Below, piece after piece: positions 47,821 to 64,000 of a stretch of DNA of 64,000 nt. The stretch lies in contig SMSO01000004.1 of NCBI GenBank assembly GCA_004764695.1, positions 806,001 through 870,000 of the forward strand, written 5' to 3'. The notes under the pieces are model-generated. The model had not been told where the DNA came from, ran no database searches, and worked only from the letters and a program-made list of their open reading frames with translations. Numbering within the stretch: the stretch's first letter is position 1; each line of letters starts with the position of its first letter. The position numbers and the translations under genes were made by a program. Source of the DNA: Schizochytrium sp. TIO01. Taxonomy: Eukaryota > Protista > Bigyra: Labyrinthulomycetes.

Positions 47821-48093
47821 TTAGCGACAAGATAGAATAACCAATTTTGATCCAGGTCTGTTGGGACGATCTATTCATGCTCAAGTTCTGACAAGGAATG
47901 CTTGAAGAAGGAAGTTAAGACCAATCACATGTATTTGCAGGTCTTGACAAGGCTATTCTTATTCGAGCGACCACCTTAAGATGAGATCAATGCGTGCATG
48001 CGCGCATTATGATCTGTTGTCTTCCCAACATATACGATTATTTAGGCAGCAACTTTCGCCACAGTCAATCAAGAACTAACTAACAAACTAAGT

Positions 48094-48363
48094 TTAACTT
48101 TGATTTTGGTTTGTTAAAAATCTAACGAAGGATCCTTCACAAAGGATAGATACCGTCTCAAACTCTGCATCATCCCTTGCAATCATTTTGTCACTTGCAC
48201 CAACCTCGGCTATGCCAAAGTCAATTACCCACACCGCCGCTTCTTTGTCGTTTCTTACGGCTTGCCGTACTGATAAGGCAAAACCTTGTGCTTTGAACGA
48301 CACGGTGGTGGTATACAAGGTAGCTGAACGCTCTAGAGCAGGATTTTGTTCTGAAATCACCAA
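48094..48363 (-). pseudogene. Possible degenerate protein-kinase fragment
   Basis: Short ORF containing AVWVIDFGIAE (kinase subdomain VII-like) without an upstream HxD motif. Confidence 0.3.
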
Positions 48364-49736: not shown

Positions 49737-50450
49737 ATGATGAGTTTTTCAATCCGTCATGCCACTGATGAAGATCTTCCTGCGCTGCAACATCTGCAGC
49801 AGTTTACGAATCCGAGCTTTCAAGTCTCTGATGGAGAGCTCTTGCACCGAGTTAAGCTGAGTCATGAAGCAGGGGGTGCCCTTGTACTACTCGTTCCCCG
49901 CGCAGAGCTCGATGACAGCTCTGAAAAGGAACATAAAAGCAGAAGCAGTAGTCTCGAAGGGGAAGAGATTCAGACAGCTCAGGTAGACGATGACAGTAGT
50001 ATAGAATCTACTATTAGTGCAGGAGGTTCGTCTGAATTTCGCATAGCTGGCGTTCTGTATTATGTTCGACGGCCCGATAGGGACTGCGAAATACTTAGAT
50101 ATGATCAAGTTTTTGACCAGTCGAATCCTCTCGCTGATACCATTTATTGGATCCATTTGGTCATTGACCCGCAAAGCCGTTCGTTGCTTGACCAATTTCA
50201 CAAAGCAGCATGCAGATACTGCTTTGAAGAGCTTTGTGCCGATCGAATTTGTGCGCTTACGCATTGCAGTGATCCTGTTGAGGGACAAATCACCTCTCTC
50301 GAAACTTTAAAGGAATATATTTCTTCAATGACTCGAACTGATCGGAATCTTTTTCTTCATACTAGCCATGGAGCAAAGTACACGAAGCTGATTCCAGGAT
50401 ACAACCCTCGAGATAGCCGCAATGCTGGATATGCGGTATGCATGGAATAT
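49737..50450 (+). other. PKS loading domain: CurA-type GNAT-like decarboxylase
   Basis: IRHATDEDLPAL, IAGVLY, ICALTHC, DRNLFLHTSHGA, LIPGYNPRDSRNAGYAVCMEY. Confidence 0.85.
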
Positions 50451-53400
50451 CTCCGCGAGCCTGTGCAGCAGCCAGTGCGTCAGGTACGAACCACTACTGA
50501 GAAACTCTCAGCCCAACAACTTCATGATCTTGTTTGTACAGCACTTGGACGCTCAGAAAACACCAACCTCGATGAAAATCAGCCATGGTTTGACCTTGGG
50601 TTTGATTCTGTCTCTCTCATGGACTTGCATGGAATGATTGAAGCCAACGTTGGACAATCGATGGATGTTTCGTTTTTATTCGCAACCAATACGCTATCAA
50701 AACTCATTCAGGAGCTTGCTGTTGACGAGAAGCTTGTTCAAGACTATGCATCCGAAGTCTCGGAAAAGACGGAGGCATCAGCCCCTACGTCTGATCTTGG
50801 AGTCCTTGGGATTGGCCTTCGTTTCCCCAATGTCGATGATTCCGCGTCCGATTTAGAATCCCTGGAAGCGTTCTCGCATGCTCTTTACAATGATGACTGC
50901 AAACCTGATTCGTATCGACGATTAGTTCAACGTGAAAGATTTAGTCTTGAACTCTTTTCTCGAGGGGTTACGCTGGAGCAAGCTCGGTGCATCCCACTTT
51001 CTCAGCGTGTTGCCCTCGAGGTTTCAATGTCAGCAATTGCGGATGGGCCACCTGGCCTGCTTGATTCGATTAATCGCTGTGTGGGCGTTTTTGTAGGGGC
51101 ATGGGACGGAGGGTGCAGTCAACACCCTAGCGCTGCCTGTTTGCGAGCTTCATCGGCTCACTCCGCTGCCGCATTCTCAAATTCAATTCTTGCAAATCGA
51201 GTTTCGTATTATCTTGATTTGACCGGTCCAAGTGTAGTAGTTGACACAGCTTGCTCAAGCTCTCTTGTAGCTTTGGATTATGCAATGAAGTCAATTGAAG
51301 CAGGCGAGTGTAAGGCTGCCCTAGTTCTGGGTGTAAATATCATTGATGACGAACGCACAGTACTATTACGACAGGGTGGCTTTCTTTCATCTACAGATGC
51401 GTGTCATGCTTTTGATGACCGCGCGGATGGTTATGCAAGGAGTGAAGGTGCAGGGGCTCTGCTAATTGCCCCAATGCAGCTCTCAGAAATTACCACGAGC
51501 TTCACCCGAGCTAAGATTTGTTCTGTGGCTGTTAACCAAGATGGAAAAACCGCTAACTTGCATGCACCTAATCCAAACGCCCAGTCTAATTTGATTCGCA
51601 AAGCATGCGCAAAGGCAGCAATAGACCCTATGTGCGTAGCCTTTGTCCAGACGCATGGCACTGGAACCCGCCTGGGGGATCCTATTGAAGCCGCTGGCCT
51701 ATACTCTGCATTAACTGCAGCCTCTCAACGCTCGAGGCCACTTTATCTGGCGTCAATCAAATCGCAATTTGGGCACCTCGAAGGAGCTGCAGGTATGATT
51801 GGTCTCATTTCAACAATTGTTTCGTTGCAAACACAAGAATTACATCCGAATCGGCGTCTCTGTCAACGCAACCCCGCCATTCGATTTAACGAATACCAAA
51901 TGGAACCGGTACCTCAAGAAAGCCCAGTTGATCTCACACCCTTCACGAGAGAGGGTGGAAAATTGATTGCTGGTGTGTCCTCTTTTGGTTTTGGCGGTAC
52001 AAACGCGCATGCACTCCTTCAAGCATTTGGTTCACGAATTTCTCAAAAGAGTATCTGTTCTCGCAAGCTTATTAATTGGAATGAAGACGCTCGAGTTATC
52101 CCTTTCTCGCCGGCACTCGAGGAGCCCTTAGATCAGTTTTATTCTGACAAGATTATGTTGAAGCTAGAAGATCACAAAGTAGGTACCTTGAAGCTTATCC
52201 CGGGATCATTTTGGGTTTCTCTGCTCTCTCAGCAATATCCAGGCTGTTATATTGAGCAGCTGGAGTTTCTAGCAGCAACTACTCTCCCTGTACCGTCAAA
52301 TTGGAGTTTAACATTGAGACAAGCTACTCACAAAGCTTACCTTGTTGACATGACAGGCAAAAACCTTTGTGCAGCAACGTTTGCACCAATGCGTTCAAGA
52401 CCAGAAGAAACTAAGTCCCTCAAAGAAGCAAGAGAGCAGTGTGCTGAGCCGATAGATCTTCGATCATTTTATGCAGAACTAGGAAATCAATACGGCCCAC
52501 ACTTCCAAGCTATGCGGGATGCTTGGAAAGATTCGAATGGAACAATTGTTCTCGCTCGTCTTGAGGTAAATGTCAATGAAGTGGAAAATAATCATGGAGC
52601 ACGTTGCCTCAGTCAAGCTGTAATTATCGATGCTGCAGCTCATGCTTGCTTCTTAACGCTAAATAAAGGCCAAGGAGAAGTCGCATCCTTACCTCACTAT
52701 GCAAAAGGATTTGGTTCGTTTTGGTGCAGCGCAGACTGGATTGAGAGGGACCTAGCATCAATTTCCTGGTGGTGCTTGGTGACGAAGAGCAAAAGCTCAC
52801 TCCAATTCGACTGGAAACTTTTTTCAACAGACGGCCAAATCGTCATGGATGCTTGTGATTTCACAATGGCATGCTCTCGTAATACTCGGTCACAGCCTCA
52901 GAGTGAACTAACCTTTGAAGGTGTAACTTGTGCAAATATAGTGTGGGAACGTTTATCAGAGAATCAATTAGGCGCACTACGCAAAGTGCCTGCGGACAAT
53001 GTCATCGATACGCCAACATGCGAAAAACTTCACGACTGCATTGTTGGAATATTGAAGCAGGATGAGAGGCCCCCACGCATTTGCATCAGGATCAATGAGC
53101 CTGGACAGGAAGGTTATGCTCGCTCATTAAGACTTGAAATGCCAGATTGGCAAATTCATACTTGGTGTGGTCCTCGCAGTCAAGACGTACAAATCCTAGA
53201 AAGTGAACACGAACTTTTGTGCACCGAAGACGGCCACATAGCTGTACGTCGTCTCAGGAGAATAAAGAATTCATTGAATTCTGAAGAAGCACAATTGCTT
53301 GTGGCCGTGAAAAAGAACGCCACGTATATTATTACGGGTGGAGCTGGGGCACTTGGAAGAAAATTTGCGGCAGAACTAATTAAAAGGGGTGCTGGAAAAG

Positions 53401-56400
53401 TTTTATTGCTAGGGCGCGCATCAACTTTCTCCGCGTCAAAGTCCGAACTTACAGAAAAGATCGAATACCAGCAATGTGATATTACTGATAGAAACGCTCT
53501 GAAGAAGATTGTCAAACCTGTGACGAACAATCTTGCCGGTGCTTTCCATTGCGCTGGAGTGCTGCGAGACGCAACTATTCCCAACCTTGAAGACTTTGAT
53601 GAAGTCTTTGCTGGCAAAGTAAGCGGAGCAGAATGTCTAATCCAGGTTTTCCATGAACTCCATGTGGAACTCGACTTTCTTATTTTGTGCTCTTCAGTGA
53701 CTGCATGCTTCGGAAGTGCAGGTCAAGCAAATTATGCCGCTGCAAATTCTGTACTTGATGCCCTGGCGGAGCAAAATGCTTTTAGGAACACTACTAGTAT
53801 TCAATGGGGCCCATGGCAGGGAGGAAGCAGTATGGCCGCCGCTTCCTTGGCGCGCTGGCAGCGACTTGGACTTAACCCAATGGATCCAAAAATGGCATGC
53901 AATAGTCTGTTTTCCTTACGAAAAAATTGTGGACCTGTTATATGTATCACTCACCTTGACCATACTGCTCCTGGGGCGCAATCAAGCTGGGCCAAAAGTC
54001 CACTTGCTTGTGATCTTGTTACGGAATCAAAAAATCTCAGCCAGGTCAACTGTAGCACCGACATTAATTTCAATGGATCGTTCTCTCAGCAAATTGTAAA
54101 AACTGTTGCCTCATCATTCTTGAACACTGAGAACTTAGTACTAGAGACACCATGGAGAGAAGCTGGTTTAGATTCACTTGCAATGGTTGAGTTTAAGAAT
54201 ATGCTCCGAACCGCTATCCCAGATCACATTCCTATGCGTGATACCGTACTCTTTGACTATCCAACGCCTCAAGCTCTTATCGAATATCTTTCAGAGTTTG
54301 ACGAAGCTAGAAATCCACACACAGAGAGTTCTGGAAAGCAAACTACCATAGAGCCGAACTTTGATCAATTAGGTTCAACAACTCTCGAAGTCACGGGTGC
54401 TGCGTGTCGCTTACCTGGCGGAGTAGATTCCCCCGAGTCATTCTGGAGATTACTAGAAGCAGGTACCGACACAATGACTGACATACCCATAGGGCGGTTT
54501 GATTGGGAAAGCAGCGCAGACCGTATTTATGCACGAAAGGCGGCATTCGTTGATCATGTAGAGCGCTTTGATTACTCACGATTTAATATCACTGAAGTTG
54601 AGGCTTCCAACATGGACCCACAACAACGATTAGTTCTTCAGGTTGCAGCTGACGCGATTGAACAGGCTGATCTTCAACCTAATACCCGTGTTGGTGTATT
54701 TGTGGGTGTTATGACGAATGACTGGGCACGAATGATGGATCCAGCAACACCGACTGCATATTCTGCAGCAGGACAGATTCCATGCATCCTCGCAAATCGT
54801 GTATCTTACATACTTGGTTTGCAAGGACCATCGATGGCGATCGATACTGCTTGTAGCTCGGGACTAGTCGCTCTTGACACTGCGGCAGCATCGATTCAAA
54901 GAGGCGACTGCAATGCAGCTTTGGTGATAGGTGTAAATCTAATTCTTGATCAGGGTGTTCATAGTGAAGAATGCGCTGCGCGTATGCTATCTACAGTTGG
55001 TCGATGTGCAACATTCTCTGAGGATGCTGATGGCTACGCTCGCGGAGAAGGCTGCGTGGCCTTGGTGTTGGAGCCAGGAAGCGCATTGAGCAGCAATCGA
55101 AAATCATGGGGAACAATTCTAGGCACTGCTGTAAACCAAGATGGTCGCAGCGCAAATCTTACATCTCCAAATGGTCGTGCTCAAGTAGATGTAATTCGCC
55201 GCGCCCAAGCGCGTGCAAAGGTCAGTCCAAGTGATATTTCATACCTAGAAACCCATGGAACTGGCACCCCTTTGGGTGATCCAATAGAAGTCGGAGCGAT
55301 TGTTGATGCTTTCAAAGGGCATAGTCACAAGCTTTGTCTTGGTGCTTTAAAGACACTGATCGGTCATGGCGAGGCTGTGGCAGGCCTGTCAGGCGTTTTA
55401 AAAGCATTGCTTTGTTTGAACCATCGCCGTGTCCCATCAGATTTACACCACCATAAAACGAATCCCAAAATACTTGATATTATAACACCATGGATTCATT
55501 TTCCTCAACATGAGCCCTTTCCTTTACCAGAGGAGCCTATCGCTGGTGTATCAGCATTTGGATTCGGAGGAACAAATGCTCATGTTATCGTTAAAGCGTC
55601 TTTGGCACCGTCTCCGCTAGACTTTCAAAGTGGGTTGTTGTATAACAACACAATATCACGCTGTCCACGTCTTCAGTGGACAAGGGATGAACTGGTGTAT
55701 TCTGTCGGTTGGGTTACATTGCCGAATGAACAAACCAAGAACTGGGCAAGCCAAAGTAACTCATTTCATATTAAGAGTTATCATGAACTGCAAGAGGTTA
55801 TCTCAACATTTTCTGAAAACGAAACTGTTGAGCTTAACCTTCTGACAACTAGCGCTTCTGTTGCAGCACTTATTCGTTGTCTTCGTCTGAGCAGGCCAAG
55901 ATGGAGCGTAAAGCTTGTTTATATTTCGGCTCCAGAGAGTAAGAATCACGATTTGGATTTACAAAACATGCAGGTTGACTCAAGCGCTCTTGAACAAAAG
56001 ATTGATCAAGATGGAATGATTAAGGTACCACGTTTGCACAAACAGCCAGGATTCCTTCCGTATAGCCTGCGTTTGGAACGTTGTGGTCCTATTCTCCTCA
56101 GTGGTGCATCGGGGGGGCTCGGCACAGCCATTCTGGAAAGTTTACTTAGTGCAGGTGCCACTAAGATCTATGCTATATCTCGTCAAGGAAAGCCCAGTAC
56201 AGAAAAACTACAGCCACTACTTGCAGTAGCGTTATTGTCAGGCGTTCTTGAGTACTTACAATGCGATGTTAGTGTGGAAATAGATGTGAAACAACTTGCT
56301 GAGAAGCTGAACTTTGAAAACATCACAACAGTTCTACATGCAGCCGGAATATTGAATGAGAAATCAATTGATCAGCTGGACGATGAAGTACTAAGTACTC

Positions 56401-59400
56401 ACATGAATGTCAAAGTACTTGGCACTCAGAATCTTCTTAGGTACTTTCCGAAGGCTTCCTTTATGGGCTTTTCCTCAACTTCTAGTATATTTGGTATGAA
56501 AGATGCACCAGCATATGCTATGTGTAACGCAGCCATGGAGTTTGAAGTTGACAAGGCTCGGAATCAAGGCCGGCATGCAGTAGCAATTCTGTGGGACCTT
56601 TGGAAAGAAACAGGTATGGCTAGTGACCGTGCTATGGGAAGCGAGCACCGAGGTCTTAGTACACGACGCGGTTGTCAAATCTTGCTTGGTATTTTGCAAA
56701 TTTGGCACGAGCAAGACTCGCATATGCTTGTAATTCTTGCGGCGAACCTCCAGCGCTTACGTAAAACAATTAGCGAACCTGCTCTTCTAGACGATTTAAC
56801 AACAGCTGAGTATGTATCGACCTCACAGTCTGCAAATGTGACACACTTTAAAGCAGCATCAAGCTTACAGCTCACTCTTGCTGACCAAACTTTGGAAACT
56901 TGGCCAAGTTTGATTGAAGAATGGATTTTGAAAAAGTCCAAGCAGCTGCAAGCAAGCCATACTAGTGAAATTGATTCTCTGACTCCTTGGCAGCAAGCGG
57001 GATTTGATTCCCTATCCATGACTGAATTCACTGCTTCTCTAAATACATCGCTTGGGCTGAAAGGCACCATGGACGAACTTTCTGACACGGTTATGTTTGA
57101 TCATCCCAATCCAAACGATCTTGCCAAATACATTGCAGAATTGTACAAGACTACAGCAGCTGCTGCAAGCACACGCACTACTGAACCCCCCATGCGAGAC
57201 ACCAGAACTAAAGGATCAGCAGAGGCAGAGGCAGAGGCTGCTATTGTCAGCATCGCTCTTCGTTTTCCTGGTAGTCGGGAAAATTCAACTCCAGCTGGTT
57301 TTTGGGATTTCTTATGCAGTGGGAAAGATGCTATTGTAAATATCCCGCGAGCGAGAATTCCTGATCTAGCAACGGCACCAGGAGAGAATCTTCATCAAGT
57401 CTATGTTCGCAAGGGTGCTTTTCTACACCCAGATCTTTTCCATGCAGATATTAGCAAGAGTGGGTTGTCGCTCTCAGATGCCGAGTGTGAGATCATTGAT
57501 CCACATCAGCGCCTGTCACTACAGGTTGCAGCTGAAGCACTTGCTTCGGCTGAAAAAACTGGAGCCGATATGACCTGCGTAGGCGTCTTTGTTGGAGCAC
57601 AAAATACGGAGTATATCCTGTCACAGGCTCATAAAGTGAGCACTTATACTGCTACAGGTACAGCGCTCTCCATCATTGCAAACCGCATTTCGTTTGTCTT
57701 TAATCTTACAGGGCCCTCTATGACTGTTGATACTGCCTGCTCGTCATCACTCGTAGCACTGGACGCAGCTTTGAAAGCCCTACATGCAGGAGATTGTACA
57801 AGTGCCTTAGTTCTTGCAGTTGACTTAATGCTCTCACCTCATAGGTTTGAAACAACATGTGCAGCCCAAATGCTTTCTCCCCAAGGTCGCTGTGCAACAT
57901 TCTCTGATCAAGCGGATGGCTACGCCCGCGGTGAAGGCTGTGCAGCCCTAGTAATAACGCTTGATTCAACTTGCAATCTTCCTGCATGGGGGGTTGTTCG
58001 CGGAATTGCCTTAAATCAGGATGGTCGAAGTGCAAACCTCACTTCGCCACGGGGTCCGGCACAAGTTGCCTGTATTGAGCGTGCACTTCAAAGAGCAAGC
58101 CTTAATAGTATTGAAGAAGTGTCCTTTATTGAAGCACATGGTACAGGAACAAAACTTGGCGACCCCCAAGAGATGGAGGCTTTATCAGCAGTCTTTAAAA
58201 CTCGTACGAAACCTTTGCCTGTTGGTGCTGTGAAATCCTCCATTGGTCACCTCGAGGCTGCTGCTGGCCTAGCAGGTATCATCAAATCGCTCTTGTGTCT
58301 CAAAAATGGATCCGTGCCGGCGAATTTACATTGCAATAACCTTAATCCAAGACTTTTGCGGATTCAAGGTCGTTGCCCTCTTGTATTTCCTAAATGCAGT
58401 GTAGAGCTTAATGCAAAGGCAGAAGGCCGTTTGGCCGGAGTATCTTCGTTTGGTTTCGGAGGCACAAATGGCCATGTGGTGCTTTCAGGTGTCTCAGAGG
58501 AACGCTCCTCCCGCGCGGAGATGTGTTTTGTGTCTAAACTTCTTCCTGCTAAAGTGTTCAAGCTCCAGCAACAATTAACAGGGTCTTCGTCGCATGCTTC
58601 GCAACAACGGTGGAAGTTCAAGATGCTCTCGGAGATGACAAACCTGATTCGCAATCATCGTGTGGGCGATCTTTCTGTACTTCCAGCAACTTCTTACATG
58701 GAAATAGTCCAGCCACTTTTTGAGGGGAAAGCTTTGTCGTTCTCAAATCTTGATTTGCGAAGCATGTACTTTATTCCAGACAATGAAGAGGAATTAGAGT
58801 TTGATGTTACTTATGACCTTTCCAGTGAAATTGTGTCAATCATTTCCTCGAGAGATCATTGTCTACGAGCTCAAATGAACGTCAAAACAAACCAGTCTTT
58901 GGTTTCAAGAAGAGTTGATTTACCTGTGATCCAGCAACGGTGTACCATTGAGCTGCCAGGTGGGGATGACCTTTATCAAGGAGTTGGTAATCAGTATGCT
59001 GGTCCTTTTCGTAGCCTCAAGTTTGCATGGGCGAACCAAGATGGCAGTGAGCTGTTAGGCAAGCTTTCAGTTGATCAAAACGTTGCCCTTGACGTTCTTT
59101 CTTCAGCCTGGCTAGATGCAGCTAGCCATGTTGCATTAGCTGCACTTCAACCTAGTGAGAGAAAACAGCCAGTATACGCTGCAAAAGTTATTGGATATGA
59201 GCTAGCAGATGTTCAAACCAAGCAAAACGCTGCCAAAGATTCCTTTCTCTGGACTTACATCAAACAGGTCTCTCTAAATACCTTTGACATGCAAATTTTT
59301 CGTAAAACAGGTGAGGTATTGGCTGAGGTTCATAACTTTAGCTTTGGGTTTTTCTCACGAGGAGCATCTCTGAATTCCGGGATGGCAAATGAGCAAAACT

Positions 59401-62400
59401 TGTTGTGGAAAGATAACTGGGAGAGTATACTTACCACGAGTAATAGCTCGGATTTCGTCTCAAATGAGAAGATGGAAATTCTGGATGTGAATACGACTCC
59501 GAAACTTCTCACCCAGCTGACCCATATACTAAGCCAACATTCTGCTGCTTCCTTGTTGATTCCGATTCGAGACCCTGGGCAGCGGGGATTGGTTGCCTGT
59601 GTCCGCCGAGAATACCCGCATGCCACACTTTCCACTATTGGCGGTGAACAAATTGATTTGCCAACTCTTCAGAATATCTTGCTCATCGCACAGGGTCTTC
59701 CAGGAAATGTTGATCTACGGTTGAAAAGTGAAGACCGGGACTCGAGCAACCCGAATTTAGAAATATTGCGAGGGCTCGAGCCAATAATTACTTGCGCTGA
59801 TGAACTCCCCCTTGTGCAAATCATCAAAGGTGCCACCTACATTATTACTGGTGGTGCTGGGGCACTTGGACAACATTTTGGCTCATATATTGCTGCATAT
59901 GGTGGTATTGTTATCCTTCTTGGGCGAACTAAACCTGAACACGAAATCCCGGAAGGTTGTACATTTTTAAGTTGTGATATAACTTGCAATGATGCAGTGA
60001 AGGAGGTCGTTCGCCGCTGTAAAGATTTAAGAGGCATTATTCATTGTGCTGGACTCCTCAAAGACGCTACTCTTCAAACTGCCAGCGTAGCAGACTTTGA
60101 CATAATCTCTGCACCCAAGATCTTCGGAATTAAAACCCTTTTGCAACAAGCAGATTGCAAGTCCTTGGATTTTTGTGTGCTTTTCTCCTCGATAGCGGCA
60201 TCGGTTGGATCTGCCGGGCAAAGCATTTATGGGTCAGTAAATGCAGAGCTTGACATGCTCGCACATGAACTTCATTGTAGCGGAATGAATGTTGTAAGCA
60301 TTCGATGGGGCCCCTGGGCGGGTGCTGGAATGGCATCTTCTCTAACAGAGAAGTGGAGACGTATGCAGCTAGTCCCTTTGAAACCAGAGGATGCAGTGCG
60401 AGAACTCTTTAATATTCCTCGAGGGATGCCTGTGGTAACTATTTGTGGATTCATTCAAGAGAACAAAGAAATAAAACTTGAGAAGCAAGCGAGAGAATCA
60501 ATAGATTACCAATCACCCCGTACGAAGGAAGAACTAATTAACTTGGTTTTGAACATCGCGCAAGAAGTAAGCCCTGACCATTCTTCATTCGAACTGGATG
60601 ACTCCTGGAGAGAAGCTGGGCTAGATAGTCTTGCTATGGTTGAATTTCGAAACGTTCTTCAGAGTCGTTTAGGTGGCTCCTCTATTATTGAAATTGAAGA
60701 CACAATACTCTTTGACTACCCAAATGCATCGTTGCTTGTTGAGTGGTTGACAGAGAAACTCCCAGTTCAAATCCAGGGTGAAACTACAGGCGCTGCATCT
60801 CCTCAACAAAACGATGACGATTCTCATATTCAATCGTGGCTTGTTACAGGGGCTGCATGTCGCCTTCCAGCTGGCGTAGACTCTCTTGAGAAATACTGGC
60901 AGCTTTTGTGCTCTGGAGAACATGCCATGCAAAAAATTCCCAAGTCGAGATTTGATATTGAGGCTGCCTTCGATGCAGATCCATCAACACCATTTAAATC
61001 CTATGTTGACCAAGCAGCTCTCGTTGACGACATATACTCATTCGATAATAGTAAGTTTGGAATCTCCGATCAAGAAGCCATTCGCATGGACCCTCAGCAA
61101 AGACTTGCCGTGGAGTGTGCATATGAAGCAATGGTTAGCGCTGGCCTTGCCGAAGAACCCACGAAAGCCGGTACAAAACTTTCTTTGCGAAACATTAAAA
61201 TGTCGGAAGTTGGAGTCTATGTTGGAATGATGACGAATGACTGGGCTAAAATGAATCACGGTGCCCCTTCACCATTTACAGCCACAGGACACTCGCCCGC
61301 AATTGCAGCAAATAGGATTTCTTATCTTCTAGGGCTGACTGGCCCAAGTATGACGGTTGACACCGCCTGCAGCTCTTCAATTGTTGCACTTGACGCTGCT
61401 TGCCGGGCCTTAAGCAGTGGTGATTGTGACGCTGCAATTGTAATTGGGGTCAATCTCATTCTGACGTCAGATCTTTTCATAGAAGAATGCGCTGCACGAA
61501 TGCTTTCTCCCCGTGGTTTCTGCTCAACATTTTCAGCTGAAGCTGATGGATATGCCCGGGGTGAAGGGTGTGTTGCTTTAGTGTTACAGCGAAAAAAACA
61601 CAATCATGTAGAGGACTCCCAAAGAGTATTAGGAGAAATCTTAGGTGTTGCTGTGAACCAAGATGGTCGCAGTGCAAACATTACATCCCCAAATGGGCGT
61701 GCACAGGAAGAGGTTATTCGTATGGCACTGAAGCGAGCCCATGCTACGCCACAACAAATTGCGTATGTTGAAACACATGGTACTGGAACCGCGCTAGGAG
61801 ATCCACTTGAAATTAGCGCCCTAGCAAGAGTATTTGCTGACCGCGAAACTCCTCTGATCATAGGTGCTGCAAAGGCATCTATTGGACATACTGAAGGGGC
61901 ATCTGGTTTGGCTGGACTTCTCAAAGCACTCCTTTGTGTGTATTTTAAAGAAGTGCCTGGCCTGGCAAGTTTAGCGAAAAAGACCGATCTTAGTCCTAAA
62001 GTGCGCAACGCTGCTCTGGAACACATGGTGTTTCCTGTTCGTGGAAATTTGCAAAGCCTCCCCAGCAATTCTCTTGTAGGACTTTCAAGCTTTGGCTTCG
62101 GAGGAACAAACACGCACACAATTCTGAGAGCTTCTTCAGGTAAAGCTAAGTTTGATTTGTCTCTAGCATCTAGGTCAATCGTATGGACACGAAAAACATT
62201 TTTACCTCGTGTTACGAGTGTCAAGTCCCATGGTGGGTGTAACAAAGTGCAGGAAACGTCTACGCGAGTCGAGAACCAACTTAATCCCTCGAATCAGAAA
62301 GACGTTCCACAAAGGCATGCCCTCCTATCAGCGGGTTCGCTACCGGAAAATGAATGTCCAACCATGTTTGGGGTTAAATCAAAGCTCCCAACATACGCAC

Positions 62401-64000
62401 TTTTGGATCTTTTAATTTGGTGTCAACATGACACTCATAAAAACACAAGTGGCTACTTGACTTGGGCCTCACTAAAGCTCCAATCTAGTACAGTAAAGCC
62501 CTCACATAAGGTCAAGGTTGGCATGTCAAAGATTACAAGTGGAAGCACCATATTATGTGAGTTTGAAAATGTAACACAATTGCAGCAGTCTCTGTTTGAT
62601 GATGGGACGCTTCCAATTATCGTTTCGCAGAATTTTAATTGGGTATCAAGATCACCTGCATGGCTGAAACATTGTCTGGCTCAAGTAGGATGGCGTAAAC
62701 CAGACTGGCTTGTTACCGATGTGAAGTCTTCTCTAGACGAAAGAATGCTGCGGCTAACATTTTCAAAGCCACTTCCTCGGCCGAGCGGGTACTTCTGGGT
62801 TCCCGAGCTACTGGGCGAATGCGTTATGGCACTTGGATTAGTTCAGGCCAGGAGGCACGAGGTAGACAGTCAATCTAGAGTTGATGTCCCTCCATCGCTG
62901 AGTTTTGTAGAAACAATGGTTTGCTCACTTTCCAATATATTATTCCACGTGCAAGATTCTTCATTCGTTGGGCCGCTGGAGTGCACCATTGAAGCAACTC
63001 GTGGCCTTCTTCACATTACTAGCTGTGAAACTGGTCACGTACTTTTTTATCTTAAGGGTGCTCGCTGCGAGTTTGGAAAGGAAATTGGAGAAACAACCTC
63101 CTACGTCCGGCGTTGGATTCCCCATGTGAGGCCATCATTTCCCCGACAGATCACTGGCGATAGCAGATTCACCATGAACGATGTCAAGAAGTATGTACAT
63201 CCTCGGGAGGTGAAAGACAGGGTGGGAGATGAGGCGCTAGAGGTTTACTGCGCACATTATATTAGGCGCGCCCTTTCAATGCTGCCAGCAGGATTTATAC
63301 CCGCCGAACCGCATCTCCAGTTCTTATTAAATAGATGGAAAGATCAATATTCCAATGCTCAAAGTTTTGAGAGTTTGAAAGATATTGAACCCACAGGGGT
63401 GGAATACGAATTTGCTCAGAATTGTGTAGAAGCTCTACCTGAAATCATGCAAGGAAGGCGACCCGCTTTGGATGTCTTATTTTCTAAGCCGGATCTTACA
63501 ACGCGACTGTATAGTGAGTCAACTCCTTCCCTCACCTGCAACAACGCAATTGCACAAGCTGTAAAGGGCATTGCTCAGTCAAAGTATTCATCTGAGGGCG
63601 ATTCAAAGGTTCTCCGCATCCTTGAGTTGGGCGCAGGAACAGGAGGCACAACTATGCATTTGGTCAAATTTTTGAAGTTGCATCAAACGGAATACTTCTT
63701 CACAGATATTTCAGATTACTTCTTACGGCAAGCAGAAGAAACATTCTCAGCATACTCAGACATGATGCGATACACGCTCTTGAATGTCGAAAATTCCCTT
63801 CATGAACAAGGATTTGCAATGCACCAATTTGATGTGATTATTGCATCCAACATCATCCATGCAACACAAGAGCTTCATGTAACTCTTGGTCATATTGCTG
63901 ACCTTTTAGTTCCTGGAGGTTGCTTTCTATTAAATGAAGCCACAATATCAACCGCGTTTCTAGATGCCACGTTTGCGCTCACAAGTGGATGGTGGCGATT
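49737..64000 (+). CDS. Giant modular type I polyketide synthase, AT-less (trans-AT type), 3' truncated by the window: GNAT-ACP-KS-DH-KR-ACP-KS-KR-ACP-KS-DH-KR-ACP-KS-pseudoDH-cMT...
   Basis: Manual translation from ATG 49737 (in-frame TAA upstream at 49701) finds no stop to the window end (>4750 aa). Four KS with DTACSS/HGTGT/GH, four ACP with GxDS, three KR, two intact DH and one C-methyltransferase; no AT domain. Confidence 0.97.
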   Translation, partial: MMSFSIRHATDEDLPALQHLQQFTNPSFQVSDGELLHRVKLSHEAGGALVLLVPRAELDDSSEKEHKSRSSSLEGEEIQTAQVDDDSSIESTISAGGSSEFRIAGVLYYVRRPDRDCEILRYDQVFDQSNPLADTIYWIHLVIDPQSRSLLDQFHKAACRYCFEELCADRICALTHCSDPVEGQITSLETLKEYISSMTRTDRNLFLHTSHGAKYTKLIPGYNPRDSRNAGYAVCMEYLREPVQQPVRQVRTTTEKLSAQQLHDLVCTALGRSENTNLDENQPWFDLGFDSVSLMDLHGMIEANVGQSMDVSFLFATNTLSKLIQELAVDEKLVQDYASEVSEKTEASAPTSDLGVLGIGLRFPNVDDSASDLESLEAFSHALYNDDCKPDSYRRLVQRERFSLELFSRGVTLEQARCIPLSQRVALEVSMSAIADGPPGLLDSINRCVGVFVGAWDGGCSQHPSAACLRASSAHSAAAFSNSILANRVSYYLDLTGPSVVVDTACSSSLVALDYAMKSIEAGECKAALVLGVNIIDDERTVLLRQGGFLSSTDACHAFDDRADGYARSEGAGALLIAPMQLSEITTSFTRAKICSVAVNQDGKTANLHAPNPNAQSNLIRKACAKAAIDPMCVAFVQTHGTGTRLGDPIEAAGLYSALTAASQRSRPLYLASIKSQFGHLEGAAGMIGLISTIVSLQTQELHPNRRLCQRNPAIRFNEYQMEPVPQESPVDLTPFTREGGKLIAGVSSFGFGGTNAHALLQAFGSRISQKSICSRKLINWNEDARVIPFSPALEEPLDQFYSDKIMLKLEDHKVGTLKLIPGSFWVSLLSQQYPGCYIEQLEFLAATTLPVPSNWSLTLRQATHKAYLVDMTGKNLCAATFAPMRSRPEETKSLKEAREQCAEPIDLRSFYAELGNQYGPHFQAMRDAWKDSNGTIVLARLEVNVNEVENNHGARCLSQAVIIDAAAHACFLTLNKGQGEVASLPHYAKGFGSFWCSADWIERDLASISWWCLVTKSKSSLQFDWKLFSTDGQIVMDACDFTMACSRNTRSQPQSELTFEGVTCANIVWERLSENQLGALRKVPADNVIDTPTCEKLHDCIVGILKQDERPPRICIRINEPGQEGYARSLRLEMPDWQIHTWCGPRSQDVQILESEHELLCTEDGHIAVRRLRRIKNSLNSEEAQLLVAVKKNATYIITGGAGALGRKFAAELIKRGAGKVLLLGRASTFSASKSELTEKIEYQQCDITDRNALKKIVKPVTNNLAGAFHCAGVLRDATIPNLEDFDEVFAGKVSGAECLIQVFHELHVELDFLILCSSVTACFGSAGQANYAAANSVLDALAEQNAFRNTTSIQWGPWQGGSSMAAASLARWQRLGLNPMDPKMACNSLFSLRKNCGPVICITHLDHTAPGAQSSWAKSPLACDLVTESKNLSQVNCSTDINFNGSFSQQIVKTVASSFLNTENLVLETPWREAGLDSLAMVEFKNMLRTAIPDHIPMRDTVLFDYPTPQALIEYLSEFDEARNPHTESSGKQTTIEPNFDQLGSTTLEVTGAACRLPGGVDSPESFWRLLEAGTDTMTDIPIGRFDWESSADRIYARKAAFVDHVERFDYSRFNITEVEASNMDPQQRLVLQVAADAIEQADLQPNTRVGVFVGVMTNDWARMMDPATPTAYSAAGQIPCILANRVSYILGLQGPSMAIDTACSSGLVALDTAAASIQRGDCNAALVIGVNLILDQGVHSEECAARMLSTVGRCATFSEDADGYARGEGCVALVLEPGSALSSNRKSWGTILGTAVNQDGRSANLTSPNGRAQVDVIRRAQARAKVSPSDISYLETHGTGTPLGDPIEVGAIVDAFKGHSHKLCLGALKTLIGHGEAVAGLSGVLKALLCLNHRRVPSDLHHHKTNPKILDIITPWIHFPQHEPFPLPEEPIAGVSAFGFGGTNAHVIVKASLAPSPLDFQSGLLYNNTISRCPRLQWTRDELVYSVGWVTLPNEQTKNWASQSNSFHIKSYHELQEVISTFSENETVELNLLTTSASVAALIRCLRLSRPRWSVKLVYISAPESKNHDLDLQNMQVDSSALEQKIDQDGMIKVPRLHKQPGFLPYSLRLERCGPILLSGASGGLGTAILESLLSAGATKIYAISRQGKPSTEKLQPLLAVALLSGVLEYLQCDVSVEIDVKQLAEKLNFENITTVLHAAGILNEKSIDQLDDEVLSTHMNVKVLGTQNLLRYFPKASFMGFSSTSSIFGMKDAPAYAMCNAAMEFEVDKARNQGRHAVAILWDLWKETGMASDRAMGSEHRGLSTRRGCQILLGILQIWHEQDSHMLVILAANLQRLRKTISEPALLDDLTTAEYVSTSQSANVTHFKAASSLQLTLADQTLETWPSLIEEWILKKSKQLQASHTSEIDSLTPWQQAGFDSLSMTEFTASLNTSLGLKGTMDELSDTVMFDHPNPNDLAKYIAELYKTTAAAASTRTTEPPMRDTRTKGSAEAEAEAAIVSIALRFPGSRENSTPAGFWDFLCSGKDAIVNIPRARIPDLATAPGENLHQVYVRKGAFLHPDLFHADISKSGLSLSDAECEIIDPHQRLSLQVAAEALASAEKTGADMTCVGVFVGAQNTEYILSQAHKVSTYTATGTALSIIANRISFVFNLTGPSMTVDTACSSSLVALDAALKALHAGDCTSALVLAVDLMLSPHRFETTCAAQMLSPQGRCATFSDQADGYARGEGCAALVITLDSTCNLPAWGVVRGIALNQDGRSANLTSPRGPAQVACIERALQRASLNSIEEVSFIEAHGTGTKLGDPQEMEALSAVFKTRTKPLPVGAVKSSIGHLEAAAGLAGIIKSLLCLKNGSVPANLHCNNLNPRLLRIQGRCPLVFPKCSVELNAKAEGRLAGVSSFGFGGTNGHVVLSGVSEERSSRAEMCFVSKLLPAKVFKLQQQLTGSSSHASQQRWKFKMLSEMTNLIRNHRVGDLSVLPATSYMEIVQPLFEGKALSFSNLDLRSMYFIPDNEEELEFDVTYDLSSEIVSIISSRDHCLRAQMNVKTNQSLVSRRVDLPVIQQRCTIELPGGDDLYQGVGNQYAGPFRSLKFAWANQDGSELLGKLSVDQNVALDVLSSAWLDAASHVALAALQPSERKQPVYAAKVIGYELADVQTKQNAAKDSFLWTYIKQVSLNTFDMQIFRKTGEVLAEVHNFSFGFFSRGASLNSGMANEQNLLWKDNWESILTTSNSSDFVSNEKMEILDVNTTPKLLTQLTHILSQHSAASLLIPIRDPGQRGLVACVRREYPHATLSTIGGEQIDLPTLQNILLIAQGLPGNVDLRLKSEDRDSSNPNLEILRGLEPIITCADELPLVQIIKGATYIITGGAGALGQHFGSYIAAYGGIVILLGRTKPEHEIPEGCTFLSCDITCNDAVKEVVRRCKDLRGIIHCAGLLKDATLQTASVADFDIISAPKIFGIKTLLQQADCKSLDFCVLFSSIAASVGSAGQSIYGSVNAELDMLAHELHCSGMNVVSIRWGPWAGAGMASSLTEKWRRMQLVPLKPEDAVRELFNIPRGMPVVTICGFIQENKEIKLEKQARESIDYQSPRTKEELINLVLNIAQEVSPDHSSFELDDSWREAGLDSLAMVEFRNVLQSRLGGSSIIEIEDTILFDYPNASLLVEWLTEKLPVQIQGETTGAASPQQNDDDSHIQSWLVTGAACRLPAGVDSLEKYWQLLCSGEHAMQKIPKSRFDIEAAFDADPSTPFKSYVDQAALVDDIYSFDNSKFGISDQEAIRMDPQQRLAVECAYEAMVSAGLAEEPTKAGTKLSLRNIKMSEVGVYVGMMTNDWAKMNHGAPSPFTATGHSPAIAANRISYLLGLTGPSMTVDTACSSSIVALDAACRALSSGDCDAAIVIGVNLILTSDLFIEECAARMLSPRGFCSTFSAEADGYARGEGCVALVLQRKKHNHVEDSQRVLGEILGVAVNQDGRSANITSPNGRAQEEVIRMALKRAHATPQQIAYVETHGTGTALGDPLEISALARVFADRETPLIIGAAKASIGHTEGASGLAGLLKALLCVYFKEVPGLASLAKKTDLSPKVRNAALEHMVFPVRGNLQSLPSNSLVGLSSFGFGGTNTHTILRASSGKAKFDLSLASRSIVWTRKTFLPRVTSVKSHGGCNKVQETSTRVENQLNPSNQKDVPQRHALLSAGSLPENECPTMFGVKSKLPTYALLDLLIWCQHDTHKNTSGYLTWASLKLQSSTVKPSHKVKVGMSKITSGSTILCEFENVTQLQQSLFDDGTLPIIVSQNFNWVSRSPAWLKHCLAQVGWRKPDWLVTDVKSSLDERMLRLTFSKPLPRPSGYFWVPELLGECVMALGLVQARRHEVDSQSRVDVPPSLSFVETMVCSLSNILFHVQDSSFVGPLECTIEATRGLLHITSCETGHVLFYLKGARCEFGKEIGETTSYVRRWIPHVRPSFPRQITGDSRFTMNDVKKYVHPREVKDRVGDEALEVYCAHYIRRALSMLPAGFIPAEPHLQFLLNRWKDQYSNAQSFESLKDIEPTGVEYEFAQNCVEALPEIMQGRRPALDVLFSKPDLTTRLYSESTPSLTCNNAIAQAVKGIAQSKYSSEGDSKVLRILELGAGTGGTTMHLVKFLKLHQTEYFFTDISDYFLRQAEETFSAYSDMMRYTLLNVENSLHEQGFAMHQFDVIIASNIIHATQELHVTLGHIADLLVPGGCFLLNEATISTAFLDATFALTSGWWR
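50510..50720 (+). other. PKS loading ACP
   Basis: PWFDLGFDSVS; Ser codon at 50607. Confidence 0.85.
50790..54300 (+). other. PKS module 1: KS-DH-KR(B-type)-ACP
   Basis: KS DTACSSS (Cys 51252), THGTGT, FGHLE; DH DHKVGTLKLIP (His 52173), IDAAAH; KR TGGAGALG, HCAGVLRD, QANYAAAN; ACP GLDSL (Ser 54174). Confidence 0.9.
54380..57150 (+). other. PKS module 2: KS-KR(non-B-type)-ACP
   Basis: KS DTACSSG (Cys 54852), HGTGT, IGHGE; KR SGASGGLG, HAAGILNE, AYAMCN; ACP GFDSL (Ser 57009). Confidence 0.9.
57235..60760 (+). other. PKS module 3: KS-DH-KR(B-type)-ACP
   Basis: KS DTACSSS (Cys 57738), HGTGT, IGHLE; DH NHRVGDLSVLP (His 58656), LDAASH; KR TGGAGALG, HCAGLLKD, QSIYGSVN; ACP GLDSL (Ser 60627). Confidence 0.9.
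60835..64000 (+). other. PKS module 4 (partial): KS-pseudoDH-C-methyltransferase
   Basis: KS DTACSSS (Cys 61368), HGTGT, IGHTE; DH-sized region lacking the catalytic His/Asp; cMT ILELGAGTGGTT, FFTDIS, FDVIIASNIIHAT, LVPGG, GWW. Confidence 0.88.

What the first reader, a model, noticed from the sequence alone, without database searches (positions are those of the whole stretch)
49737..64000. Hidden giant trans-AT-type modular PKS assembly line in a protist genome
Seen: one intron-free, stop-free frame of more than 14.2 kb that the ORF track misses. It has a loading module and at least four elongation modules, each KS with an intact Cys-His-His triad, and no acyltransferase between KS and the next domain. 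Established: AT-less multimodular PKSs are typical of bacteria and some algae (for example haptophyte PKZILLA-type enzymes). Thraustochytrid PUFA synthases (tandem ACPs, KS-CLF, FabA-like DH) and FAS have different layouts. Inference: this is a non-iterative assembly line for an uncharacterised methyl-branched, unsaturated/hydroxylated polyketide in a heterotrophic stramenopile, and it needs a free-standing malonyl-AT and a PPTase encoded elsewhere.
Basis: partly seen in the sequence, partly recalled or inferred. Interest (0 to 1): 0.92.

Follow-up and report, generated by a model that had tools for sequence, protein, structure and literature searches.

The report
AT-less four-module polyketide synthase gene

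Summary
A stop-free frame runs from 49704 past the window end to a stop at 66657-66659. From the ATG at 49737 it encodes 5,640 aa: GNAT-like loader-ACP, KS-DH-KR-ACP, KS-KR-ACP, KS-DH-KR-ACP, then KS-X-cMT-KR-ACP-TE. All four KS have Cys-His-His. No AT is detectable by Pfam or by a purpose-built AT HMM.

The host is a thraustochytrid and the gene sits among ordinary eukaryotic genes with matching codon usage. Contigs of runs that look like RNA cover it.

- It is not hidden. A 5,639-aa protein differing at 13 residues is in public collections, and Song et al. 2018 list an orthologue (Mn4_04057) with the same domain string, 'without AT'.
- It is not PKZILLA-sized.
- A clade of 26 sampled bacterial AT-less (presumed trans-AT) KSs excludes its KSs. 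The best tree puts KS2-4 among cis-AT-type KSs, but an AU test does not resolve the deep placement.
- Three discrete FabD-like AT genes and two free-standing PPTase candidates lie elsewhere, unlinked.

Other first-reader notes of this scan cover parts of the same gene.

Not described in the papers found: a conserved terminal module with an unassigned ~300-aa region, His for the catalytic Tyr in KR4, a Cys-nucleophile TEII-like TE, and a ~1-kb uATG-rich leader. Verdict: new member of a known kind, moderate interest.

The parts
48713..49736 (+). Probable 5' leader of the PKS transcript: about 1.0 kb, unspliced, 15 upstream ATGs, no ORF longer than 60 aa
   Evidence: Contigs of runs X1 and X7 start at 48713 and 48723; X7 carries adaptor letters before its first base. 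Both leave the intergenic stretch 47908-48712 uncovered, apart from a 35-nt piece in X1, whereas DNA run X16 crosses it.
49737..50486 (+). GNAT-like loading domain (aa 1-250), a CurA-type malonyl decarboxylase fold
   Evidence: There is no Pfam hit. phmmer against PDB gives CurA GNAT 2ree E 3.8e-7, 7uci 1.1e-5 and GphF 6mfc 5.7e-3. The equivalents of CurA T355 (ALTHCS) and H389 (FLHTS) are conserved in 4 relatives; R404 is Asn in all 4.
50514..50711 (+). Loading ACP (aa 260-325), Ser in GFDSV
   Evidence: PF00550 E 3e-11; motif.
50736..52046 (+). KS1 (aa 334-770), C506/H640/H680; divergent N-terminal half
   Evidence: PF00109/PF02801; motifs. It forms a long-branch clade with its positional orthologues.
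52134..53006 (+). DH1 (aa 800-1090), His in HKVGTLKLIP, Asp in DAAAH
   Evidence: PF14765 E 3e-15; motifs.
53034..53936 (+). KR1 (aa 1100-1400), Tyr present, LRD motif (B-type-like)
   Evidence: PF08659 E 4.5e-43; alignment.
54096..54290 (+). ACP1
   Evidence: PF00550; GLDSL.
54369..55601 (+). KS2 (aa 1545-1955), C1706/H1840/H1877
55614..56726 (+). KR2 (structural plus catalytic halves), Tyr present, no LDD Asp
   Evidence: PF08659 E 1e-30.
56964..57134 (+). ACP2
   Evidence: PF00550; GFDSL.
57219..58511 (+). KS3 (aa 2495-2925), C2668/H2801/H2838
58584..59456 (+). DH3 (aa 2950-3240), His in HRVGDLSVLP, YAGPF, DAASH
   Evidence: The Pfam hit is weak (PF21089, E 3e-4). All three DH motifs are readable, and it is 35-39% identical to the DHs of relatives.
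59514..60416 (+). KR3, Tyr present, LKD motif
   Evidence: PF08659 E 8e-35.
60546..60749 (+). ACP3
   Evidence: PF00550.
60822..62156 (+). KS4 (aa 3696-4140), C3878/H4014/H4051
   Evidence: PF00109 E 1.5e-73.
62157..63071 (+). X4: unassigned region of about 300 aa between KS4 and the methyltransferase. It occupies the place where a DH would sit, and a His and a Glu are conserved in 4 orthologues.
   Evidence: No Pfam hit at E 0.1. The family DH HMM and hhalign are negative. The best Atlas hit scores 0.81, which is uninformative. The AlphaFold model has pLDDT below 50 here.
63072..64000 (+). C-methyltransferase (aa 4446-4850), SAM motif LELGAGTGG. It continues to 64286, beyond the window. Then follow KR4 (64314-65336), ACP4 (65532-65708), TE (65844-66656) and the stop codon (66657-66659), all in window numbering extended into L002.
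   Evidence: PF08242 E 1e-17. KR E 1e-47, PP-binding and Thioesterase E 9e-18 on L002. The AlphaFold model of the MT part has pLDDT 70-88.

Best explanation
This is a complete, functional nuclear gene of a thraustochytrid for a single-polypeptide, AT-less modular type I PKS (5,640 aa).

Inferred mechanism:
- Loading: the N-terminal CurA-like GNAT domain decarboxylates a malonyl unit to give an acetyl starter on the loading ACP.
- Extension: four KS modules each add one malonyl unit. Because no module has an AT, some acyltransferase must deliver that unit to the ACPs in trans. The candidates are the three unlinked FabD-like proteins or the MAT domains of FAS or PUFA synthase.
- Processing: module 1 (DH-KR) and module 3 (DH-KR) leave double bonds. 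Module 2 (KR) leaves a hydroxyl. Module 4 C-methylates the alpha carbon. Its KR has His in place of the catalytic Tyr, so the state of the last beta carbon is uncertain.
- Release: a C-terminal TEII-like thioesterase with a Cys nucleophile releases the chain.

By colinearity the product would be a small C10 chain with one methyl branch, of the 7-hydroxy-2-methyl-3-oxo(or hydroxy)-deca-4,8-dienoate type. The AT-less layout most likely arose by loss of cis-ATs in a eukaryotic lineage, not by descent from the sampled bacterial AT-less clade.

Shown: the ORF, the domains, the catalytic residues, the absence of AT, the genomic setting, the orthologues and the contig evidence for transcription. Inferred: starter, extender, colinearity, product, and who loads the ACPs.
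For: ORF and domains. No AT.

GNAT.

TE: it is TEII-like (RedJ 3qmw, E 3e-16) with GSCLG aligned to GHSMG, and the Cys is conserved in 5 of 5 relatives.

Eukaryotic setting:
- The window lies on a 2.32-Mb contig of a 64-Mb genome.
- The neighbours are a protein kinase, Lon, NPR2, Rsm22, Ctr and NDH2.
- Codon-usage correlation with neighbouring genes is 0.855, inside their own range of 0.76-0.87.
- The Lon protease is 82% identical to that of Hondaea.

Single copy, and the only multi-KS gene in the genome.

Selection and conservation:
- 10 synonymous against 5 non-synonymous strain differences.
- The public sequence differs at 13 of 5,639 residues.
- Collinear relatives: P0002 (5,416 aa, 42% identity) and P0003 (5,019 aa, 40%) match domain for domain, and KS1-KS4 pair as positional orthologues.

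Transcription:
- Contigs of X1 and X7 stop at the upstream gene's end, skip the intergenic region and restart at 48713 and 48723.
- In X7 the PKS contig has depth 125, against 6-11 for the neighbouring gene. DNA run X16 is flat at 22.
- 15 runs guessed to be RNA hold 77-91% of the words of 54001-64000.
- The orthologue is at FPKM 3.5 in PMC6050695.

Trans-acting candidates: FabD-like ORFs on C32 (429 aa, fabD 205 bits), C35 (318 aa) and C34 (split in two frames). PPTase hits on C30 and C31.

Phylogeny: the sampled bacterial AT-less clade (SH-aLRT 100) excludes all family KSs. KS2-4 nest with cis-AT-type KSs and the KS of a stramenopile alga. The PDB ranking of KS4 is CurL 299 bits > MAS 282 > DEBS 261 > single-KS trans-AT chains 232-256.
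Against: - No product, enzyme activity or knock-out exists.
- The runs are only guessed to be RNA, and contigs cannot give strand or expression level. The published expression of the orthologue is low.
- A 1-kb leader with 15 uATGs suggests poor translation.
- KR4 lacks the catalytic Tyr and X4 has no recognisable fold, so the last module may not work as drawn.
- The GNAT lacks the Arg equivalent to CurA R404.
- The trans-acting AT is not identified and none is linked. The C35 AT lies beside another PKS-like gene and may serve that gene instead.
- The AU test does not reject a sister relation of KS2-4 to the bacterial AT-less clade (p 0.343), so 'derived from cis-AT ancestors' is the best tree, not a proven history.
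- The comparison set was drawn from hits to this protein. It lacks curated haptophyte, chlorophyte and dinoflagellate KSs, and the 'trans-AT' label rests on AT-lessness, some ECH domains and some source names.
- Colinearity is not guaranteed in AT-less or eukaryotic PKSs.
Confidence: 0.78

Rival explanations
1. It is a bacterial trans-AT PKS proper: a recent horizontal acquisition from, or assembly contamination by, a bacterium. It would work like bacillaene- or pederin-type systems, with a dedicated trans-AT.
For: The architecture is AT-less, and the loader is a GNAT of a kind known from bacterial PKSs such as CurA and GphF. The strongest PDB score is to 7zma, which I recall as a Brevibacillus trans-AT bimodule; that score sums two KSs. 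The AU test does not exclude a sister position to the bacterial AT-less clade.
Against: - The gene is embedded in a 2.3-Mb eukaryotic contig among housekeeping genes.
- Its codon usage cannot be told apart from that of its neighbours.
- 21 runs from 10 studies hold it.
- The best bacterial KSs are only 35-47% identical, against 52-65% for the positional orthologues of the eukaryote-associated relatives.
- The sampled bacterial AT-less clade excludes it.
- No AT gene lies on contig C3.
- No HMGS/ECH beta-branching parts are present, and the post-KS Pfam families PF22336 and PF22621 seen in nearly all bacterial hits are absent.
Confidence: 0.05
2. The enzyme is real but not colinear. Modules iterate, stall or are skipped, or it primes or feeds lipid metabolism. 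The product would then not be the small C10-C11 chain predicted.
For: The terminal module is aberrant: X4 is unassigned and KR4 has Tyr replaced by His. The TE belongs to the TEII/FAS-TE family, not to classical PKS TEs. From my own knowledge, AT-less PKSs often break colinearity rules. The same genome runs large lipid synthases.
Against: Each of the four KSs has its own conserved positional orthologue, and the domain order is kept over roughly 60% sequence divergence, as expected if every module has a distinct task. KR1 and KR3, the ones paired with DHs, carry the B-type Asp, and KR2 does not. That fits a programmed, module-specific outcome.
Confidence: 0.14
3. It is a silent or decaying relic with no present function.
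For: The orthologue is at low FPKM. The leader is long and rich in uATGs. KR4 lacks the catalytic Tyr.
Against: A 16.9-kb frame without a single stop is not expected by chance; the next longest stop-free stretch in the window is 2,011 codons. All KS, ACP, DH, MT and TE catalytic residues are intact. Synonymous differences exceed non-synonymous ones, 10 to 5. The odd residues (KR4 His, TE Cys, GNAT Asn) are conserved across orthologues, not scattered. Contig evidence points to transcription.
Confidence: 0.03

Closest known systems
Mn4_04057 of thraustochytrid strain Mn4 (Song et al. 2018, BMC Genomics, PMC6050695, Table 4)
   Same: The published domain string is identical: PP-KS-DH-KR-PP:KS-KR-PP-KS-DH-KR-PP:KS-MT-KR-PP-TE. 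The paper describes it as lacking an AT, gives an expression value, and the organism is of the same group.
   Different: The paper gives only a table row. The GNAT loader, the Cys TE, the KR4 His, the X4 region, the phylogeny and the product are not described.
AT-less multimodular type I PKSs of microalgae (Shelest et al. 2015, PMC4661987; PKZILLAs of Prymnesium parvum, bioRxiv 10.1101/2024.01.29.577497)
   Same: These are eukaryotic nuclear genes encoding many KS modules on one polypeptide, with ATs displaced in trans and products mostly unknown.
   Different: This gene has only four modules (617 kDa) and no introns, and sits in a non-photosynthetic thraustochytrid. It has a GNAT loader and a terminal Cys TE. 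Its KS relation to the algal clades was not tested here, because the only alga-labelled KS in the tree was Chrysoparadoxa P0157; P0003 carries a dinoflagellate label of uncertain origin.
Bacterial trans-AT PKSs (solved KSs of PksJ and PksL; 7zma, which I recall as a Brevibacillus bimodule)
   Same: The modules lack AT, and reductive and methyltransferase domains are embedded.
   Different: The sampled bacterial AT-less clade excludes these KSs. There is no clustered AT, no beta-branching cassette, and only very short post-KS linkers.
CurA / GphF GNAT-type loading modules (PDB 2ree, 6mfc)
   Same: The GNAT-ACP order at the N-terminus is the same, and the catalytic Thr and His equivalents are conserved.
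   Different: No adaptor or MT domain lies upstream. CurA R404 is Asn here. The window protein carries an insert of about 45 aa, acidic and Ser-rich. Sequence similarity is low (E 4e-7) and no Pfam GNAT hit is found.
Thraustochytrid PUFA synthase and type I FAS
   Same: They are made by the same organism and are multidomain KS/KR/DH/ACP megasynthases.
   Different: Those enzymes carry integrated ATs and a KS-CLF pair, and lie at other loci (C4, C13, C35). This gene has single ACPs per module, a cMT, a GNAT and a TE.

Membership tests
Modular (assembly-line) type I PKS | Several KS...ACP modules in series on one polypeptide, each with catalytic KS Cys-His-His and an ACP Ser | tested here: met
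   There are 4 KS with intact triads and 5 ACPs with DS[LV] Ser, in module order.
AT-less ('trans-AT' architecture) PKS | No acyltransferase domain inside the modules | tested here: met
   No PF00698 hit at E up to 0.1. The custom AT HMM is negative here and positive in 162 comparison proteins. The linkers are too short to hold an AT.
Bacterial trans-AT PKS family (phylogenetic sense) | KS domains fall inside the trans-AT KS clade | tested here: not met
   A clade of 26 sampled bacterial AT-less KSs, taken as trans-AT, has SH-aLRT 100 and excludes all family KSs. KS2-4 sit among cis-AT-type KSs in the ML tree. A sister relation is not rejected (AU p 0.343). No curated reference set was available.
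Bacterial trans-AT PKS family (phylogenetic sense) | A discrete AT encoded with the PKS genes | tested here: not met
   None of the 7 AT matches in the genome lies on contig C3. The ORFs I scanned with Pfam on both sides of the gene are housekeeping genes; one 393-aa ORF gave no hit.
Protist AT-less multimodular PKS (Shelest et al. 2015 sense) | A nuclear eukaryotic gene that is multimodular, with ATs absent from the modules and free-standing ATs elsewhere in the genome | tested here: met
   Searches show the eukaryotic setting. Searches show three discrete FabD-like genes.
Protist AT-less multimodular PKS (Shelest et al. 2015 sense) | KSs group with the algal or protist KS clades | not tested
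   No haptophyte, chlorophyte or confirmed dinoflagellate reference KSs could be brought in. The only alga-labelled KS nearby is P0157 of Chrysoparadoxa.
GNAT-initiated loading module (CurA type) | A GNAT-fold decarboxylase with catalytic Thr and His, followed by an ACP | tested here: met
   phmmer hits CurA, 7uci and GphF. Thr and His are conserved in 4 relatives and the ACP follows directly. The fold itself is not confirmed: the AlphaFold model has pLDDT 39.
GNAT-initiated loading module (CurA type) | An Arg equivalent to CurA R404 | tested here: not met
   It is Asn in the window protein and in 3 relatives (GYNPRD and similar).
Thraustochytrid PUFA synthase | Tandem ACP repeats, a KS-CLF pair, FabA-like DH and integrated MAT | tested here: not met
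   None of these is present in this protein. KS-KS and KS-AT genes of that kind lie on C4 and C35.
Ser-hydrolase type thioesterase (PF00975) | A GxSxG nucleophile Ser | tested here: not met
   GSCLG has Cys at the position aligned to the Ser of RedJ's GHSMG. The Cys is conserved in 5 of 5 relatives. 41 of the 147 best TE relatives also have Cys.

The most novel reading that the evidence does not exclude
This is a narrow, conserved PKS family: only about five clusters among 1.84 billion representative proteins. It is found in thraustochytrid-like genomes, in unnamed JGI/ENA contigs and in one record labelled as a dinoflagellate. Its terminal module uses non-canonical chemistry: an unrecognised ~300-aa domain, a KR with His for the catalytic Tyr, and a Cys thioesterase. 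It would make a still unknown small methyl-branched polyketide with a conserved ecological or signalling role. Because the gene is intron-free and only four modules long, it could be a workable eukaryotic model for asking how AT-less assembly lines of protists receive their extender units.
Probability: 0.3. Interest if true: 0.6.

Novelty: new member of a known kind. Interest (0 to 1): 0.4.

Why it matters
AT-less modular PKSs of protists make some of the most complex marine toxins, yet almost none has been tied to a product, and how their ACPs get loaded is unknown. The known examples sit in hard-to-handle algae and are enormous. This gene is small (four modules), intron-free, single-copy and apparently expressed. 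From my own knowledge, thraustochytrids can be grown and transformed. A knock-out with metabolite comparison, and ACP-loading assays with the three discrete FabD-like proteins, are therefore practical.

For the scan itself the result is sobering. The gene is real, but it was already annotated and tabulated, and the 'trans-AT' label describes the layout, not the ancestry.

Tried and rejected
- AlphaFold of the GNAT region from a single sequence gave pLDDT 38.7, which is unusable, so no fold search was run.
- AlphaFold of X4 plus MT with a 4-row alignment modelled only the MT part (pLDDT 70-88). X4 stayed below 50.
- X4 against a family DH HMM and by hhalign gave no similarity. The ESM Atlas gave a best score of 0.81, which is uninformative.
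- Metagenome scans for relatives, once with the TE protein and once with the CFAYAGGHP codon pattern, returned only the known P0004 contig and two unrelated bacterial contigs.
The genomic context and taxon of the relatives, including the Durusdinium record, could therefore not be checked.
- NCBIfam gave nothing useful for the GNAT or the TE.
- The AU test of KS2-4 held together with the bacterial AT-less clade was inconclusive (p 0.343).
- Contamination or recent HGT was considered and rejected on genomic context and codon usage.
- PUFA synthase or FAS identity was rejected on architecture.
- Literature searches for a characterised thraustochytrid modular PKS found only the 2018 table.
Full report
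**1. Observation**

A six-frame scan shows one stop-free stretch of 4,765 codons at 49704-63998 on the + strand. The next longest in the window has 2,011 codons. The ORF list misses it only because ORFs that run off the source are not listed. The window is G000:C3:806001-870000 in a 64.07-Mb, 37-contig genome.

After fetching the next 39 kb, the frame closes at 66657-66659 in extended window numbering. From the first ATG at 49737 the product is 5,640 aa and 617 kDa. GC content is like that of the surroundings.

**2. Anatomy**

Pfam was run on the whole protein, on ten overlapping 700-aa pieces and on the C-terminal remainder. Positions are aa from 49737.

| Segment | Domains (aa) |
|---|---|
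| Loading | N-terminal 250 aa without Pfam hit; ACP 260-325 |
| Module 1 | KS1 334-770; DH 800-1090; KR about 1100-1400; ACP 1454-1518 |
| Module 2 | KS2 1545-1955; KR 1960-2330; ACP 2410-2466 |
| Module 3 | KS3 2495-2925; DH 2950-3240; KR 3260-3560; ACP 3604-3671 |
| Module 4 | KS4 3696-4140; unassigned X4 4141-4445; C-methyltransferase 4446-4850; KR 4860-5200; ACP 5266-5324; thioesterase 5370-5640 |

- All four KSs have the Cys-His-His triad.
- The five ACPs have the DS[LV] serine.
- DH1 and DH3 have His...Pro, YGP-like and DxxxH motifs.
- No Acyl_transf_1 hit appears at any threshold used.
- An AT HMM built here from 60 PKS AT domains finds ATs in 162 comparison proteins. It finds none in this protein or its four closest relatives.
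- The KS-to-next-domain spacers are far too short for an AT.

The assembly line has a loader, exactly four elongation modules and a terminating TE.

**3. Loader**

The N-terminal 268 aa hit the CurA GNAT loading domain (2ree, E 3.8e-7), 7uci/7ucl (1.1e-5) and the GphF GNAT (6mfc, 5.7e-3). I counted positions along the printed alignment.

- CurA T355 and H389 align with the Thr of ALTHCS and the His of FLHTS.
- Both are kept in four relatives.
- CurA R404 is Asn in all four.

The fold could not be confirmed, because the single-sequence AlphaFold model had pLDDT 39.

**4. Terminal module**

- The TE is most like free-standing type II thioesterases and FAS-type TEs: RedJ 3qmw at 3e-16, then RifR, YbtT and others.
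- Its nucleophile is Cys. GSCLG aligns to GHSMG, and the Cys is conserved in 5 of 5 relatives (agrees with note s1-834207).
- Among the 147 best representatives, 41 also carry Cys. Those I looked up by name are large PKSs from uncultured bacteria. The Cys type is therefore a wider sub-family.
- KR4 has an intact NADPH motif, Lys, Ser and Asn, but His in place of the catalytic Tyr (GQSNHAAAN). The same holds in P0002, P0003 and P0007. KR1-3 have Tyr.
- X4 gave nothing with Pfam, a family DH HMM, hhalign, the ESM Atlas or AlphaFold. A His and a Glu are conserved in the four orthologues.

**5. Setting and host**

- The flanking ORFs I scanned encode a PfkB-type kinase, a Ctr copper transporter, NDH2, NPR2, Rsm22, a Ser/Thr protein kinase and a Lon protease.
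- The Lon protease is 82% identical to that of the thraustochytrid Hondaea fermentalgiana and about 49% to oomycete proteins.
- Codon usage of the PKS correlates with the neighbouring genes (r 0.855) as well as they correlate with one another (0.76-0.87).
- The genome has only this one multi-KS modular gene. Its other KS and AT matches belong to FAS-like (C13), PUFA-synthase-like (C4) and other loci.

Contamination and recent transfer are therefore unlikely.

**6. Trans-acting partners**

- Three discrete FabD-like ORFs exist: C32 (429 aa, fabD model 205 bits), C35 (318 aa) and C34 (split over two frames).
- None is on contig C3.
- The C35 one lies beside another PKS-like gene, already noted by the scan as s1-824451.
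- PPTase matches lie on C30, on C31 and inside the FAS-like ORF on C13.

Which protein loads the ACPs remains unknown.

**7. Expression**

Twenty-one runs from ten studies hold the 10-kb stretch 54001-64000. Fifteen of them are only guessed to be RNA. Four runs were laid on 46000-51999.

- DNA run X16 crosses the stretch in one contig at flat depth 22.
- X1 and X7 cover the upstream gene, stop by about 47907, and leave the intergenic region empty apart from one 35-nt piece in X1.
- They restart at 48713 (X1) and 48723 (X7, preceded by adaptor letters).
- In X7 the PKS contig has depth 125 against 6-11 for the neighbouring gene.
- No joints were seen.

This is what transcript assemblies look like. 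It indicates an unspliced mRNA with a leader of about 1.0 kb holding 15 uATGs and no sizeable ORF. The tool warns that contigs cannot give strand or level, so I treat transcription as probable, not proven.

Strain differences in the first 2.3 kb of coding sequence are 10 synonymous to 5 non-synonymous.

**8. Relatives**

- A 5,639-aa protein differing at 13 residues is already in the public collections.
- P0002 (JGI, 5,416 aa, 42% identity) is collinear domain for domain.
- P0003 (NCBI CAK9072556.1, labelled Durusdinium trenchii, 5,019 aa, 40%) is also collinear, with gaps in KS2 and KS3.
- P0004, P0007 and P0187 are partial or variant relatives. None has an AT.
- Each KS pairs with its positional orthologue at 52-65% identity, against at most 47% to any bacterial KS.
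- A TE search over 1.84 billion representatives finds only five family clusters before identity drops to 33%.
- Two metagenome scans added nothing.
Whether the dinoflagellate record is genuine or a thraustochytrid contaminant stays open.

**9. Phylogeny**

KS domains were cut from 257 proteins and labelled by whether an AT follows.

- FastTree on 208 KSs puts all 16 family KSs in one clade (support 99). That clade sits inside a cis-AT-dominated group and away from a block of 65 bacterial AT-less KSs.
- IQ-TREE (LG+C20 by PMSF) on 77 KSs recovers the bacterial AT-less clade (26 rows, SH-aLRT 100) without any family KS.
- It places KS2-4 (99) with a Chrysoparadoxa cis-AT KS, an Amycolatopsis KS and a myxalamid-type KS, inside the cis-AT group. 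KS1 is a long, unresolved branch.
- KS4 also scores higher against CurL, MAS and DEBS than against solved single-KS trans-AT chains.
- However, an AU test does not reject holding KS2-4 together with the bacterial AT-less clade (ΔlnL 11.35, p 0.343).

The safe statement is that the family is not nested in the sampled bacterial AT-less clade, and that its deeper origin is unresolved. The sample was biased towards hits of this protein and lacked curated algal KSs. I take the bacterial AT-less clade to be trans-AT because some members carry ECH domains or PksL/PksN source names.

**10. Literature**

- Song et al. 2018 (PMC6050695) list, for thraustochytrid Mn4, gene Mn4_04057 as 'PKS-like' with the string PP-KS-DH-KR-PP:KS-KR-PP-KS-DH-KR-PP:KS-MT-KR-PP-TE. 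It has FPKM 3.52, is described as lacking an AT, and is accompanied by ten 'trans-AT' genes.
- Shelest et al. 2015 (PMC4661987) established AT-less multimodular PKSs with ATs displaced in trans as common in microalgae.
- Kohli et al. 2016 (PMC5029157) recorded type I PKS KS transcripts in labyrinthulids and thraustochytrids.
- The PKZILLA preprint and a 2026 paper on a fungal modular PKS show that the field is active.
- No paper characterising this thraustochytrid enzyme was found.

**11. Mechanism (inference)**

- Starter: an acetyl unit from GNAT-catalysed decarboxylation.
- Extension: four malonyl units supplied in trans.
- Module 1 leaves an enoyl, module 2 a hydroxyl and module 3 an enoyl.
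- Module 4 adds an alpha-methyl, and the beta-carbon state is uncertain because of KR4 and X4.
- Release is by the Cys TE.

The expected skeleton is a C10 chain with one methyl branch, of the 7-hydroxy-2-methyl-3-oxo/hydroxy-deca-4,8-dienoate type. KR1 and KR3 carry the Asp of the B-type motif and are the ones paired with DHs; KR2 lacks it. By the published KR-motif rules, which I cite from my own knowledge, this is internally consistent.

**12. Verdict**

This is a new member of a known kind, and its orthologue was already tabulated. The conserved odd terminal module, the GNAT loader, the narrow distribution and the practical size of the gene give it moderate interest (0.4).

Noticed in passing
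window 48713-49736: The PKS transcript seems to start about 1.0 kb upstream of the ATG. The leader is unspliced, has 41% GC, holds 15 upstream ATGs and has no ORF over 60 aa, which suggests translational control.
   Followed up: partly
window 49517: A 10-bp deletion polymorphism in the leader appears in runs X3 and X7 but not in X1 or X16. These strains also differ at about 1% of leader positions.
   Followed up: no
L002:1314-2336 (window numbering 64314-65336): KR4 has His in place of the catalytic Tyr (GQSNHAAAN), with the NADPH motif, Lys, Ser and Asn intact. This is conserved in four orthologues, while KR1-3 have Tyr.
   Followed up: yes
L002:2844-3656 (window numbering 65844-66656): The terminal thioesterase is TEII/FAS-TE-like with a Cys nucleophile (GSCLG), conserved in 5 of 5 relatives. 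41 of the 147 nearest TE representatives share the Cys; those looked up by name are large PKSs of uncultured bacteria.
   Followed up: yes
window 62157-63071: The region of about 300 aa between KS4 and the methyltransferase matches no family, profile or confident fold. A His and a Glu are conserved in four orthologues, so it may be a very divergent or degenerate DH.
   Followed up: yes
window 49905-50036: An acidic, Ser-rich insert of about 45 aa lies inside the GNAT-like domain and is absent from the three relatives.
   Followed up: no
P0003 (NCBI CAK9072556.1, labelled Durusdinium trenchii): A protein filed under a dinoflagellate is collinear domain for domain with this thraustochytrid PKS (40% identity). 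Its gene model has gaps in KS2 and KS3. It is either a true dinoflagellate orthologue or a thraustochytrid contaminant in that assembly.
   Followed up: partly
G000:C35:2592223-2600548 (L010, L011, L018): A 1,947-aa ORF with AT and KS matches lies next to a convergent 318-aa FabD/MdcH-like AT. It is a second, different PKS-like locus with its own discrete AT, also noted by the scan as s1-824451.
   Followed up: partly
G000:C34:349704-350578 (L019:1986-3196): A FabD-like gene is split over two overlapping reading frames (231 and 195 aa). This could be a short intron, a frameshift or an assembly error, and it may be the mitochondrial malonyl transferase.
   Followed up: no
window 45856-47817: The upstream gene fuses a P-loop, uridine-kinase-like N-terminal part to a PfkB carbohydrate kinase domain.
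   Followed up: no
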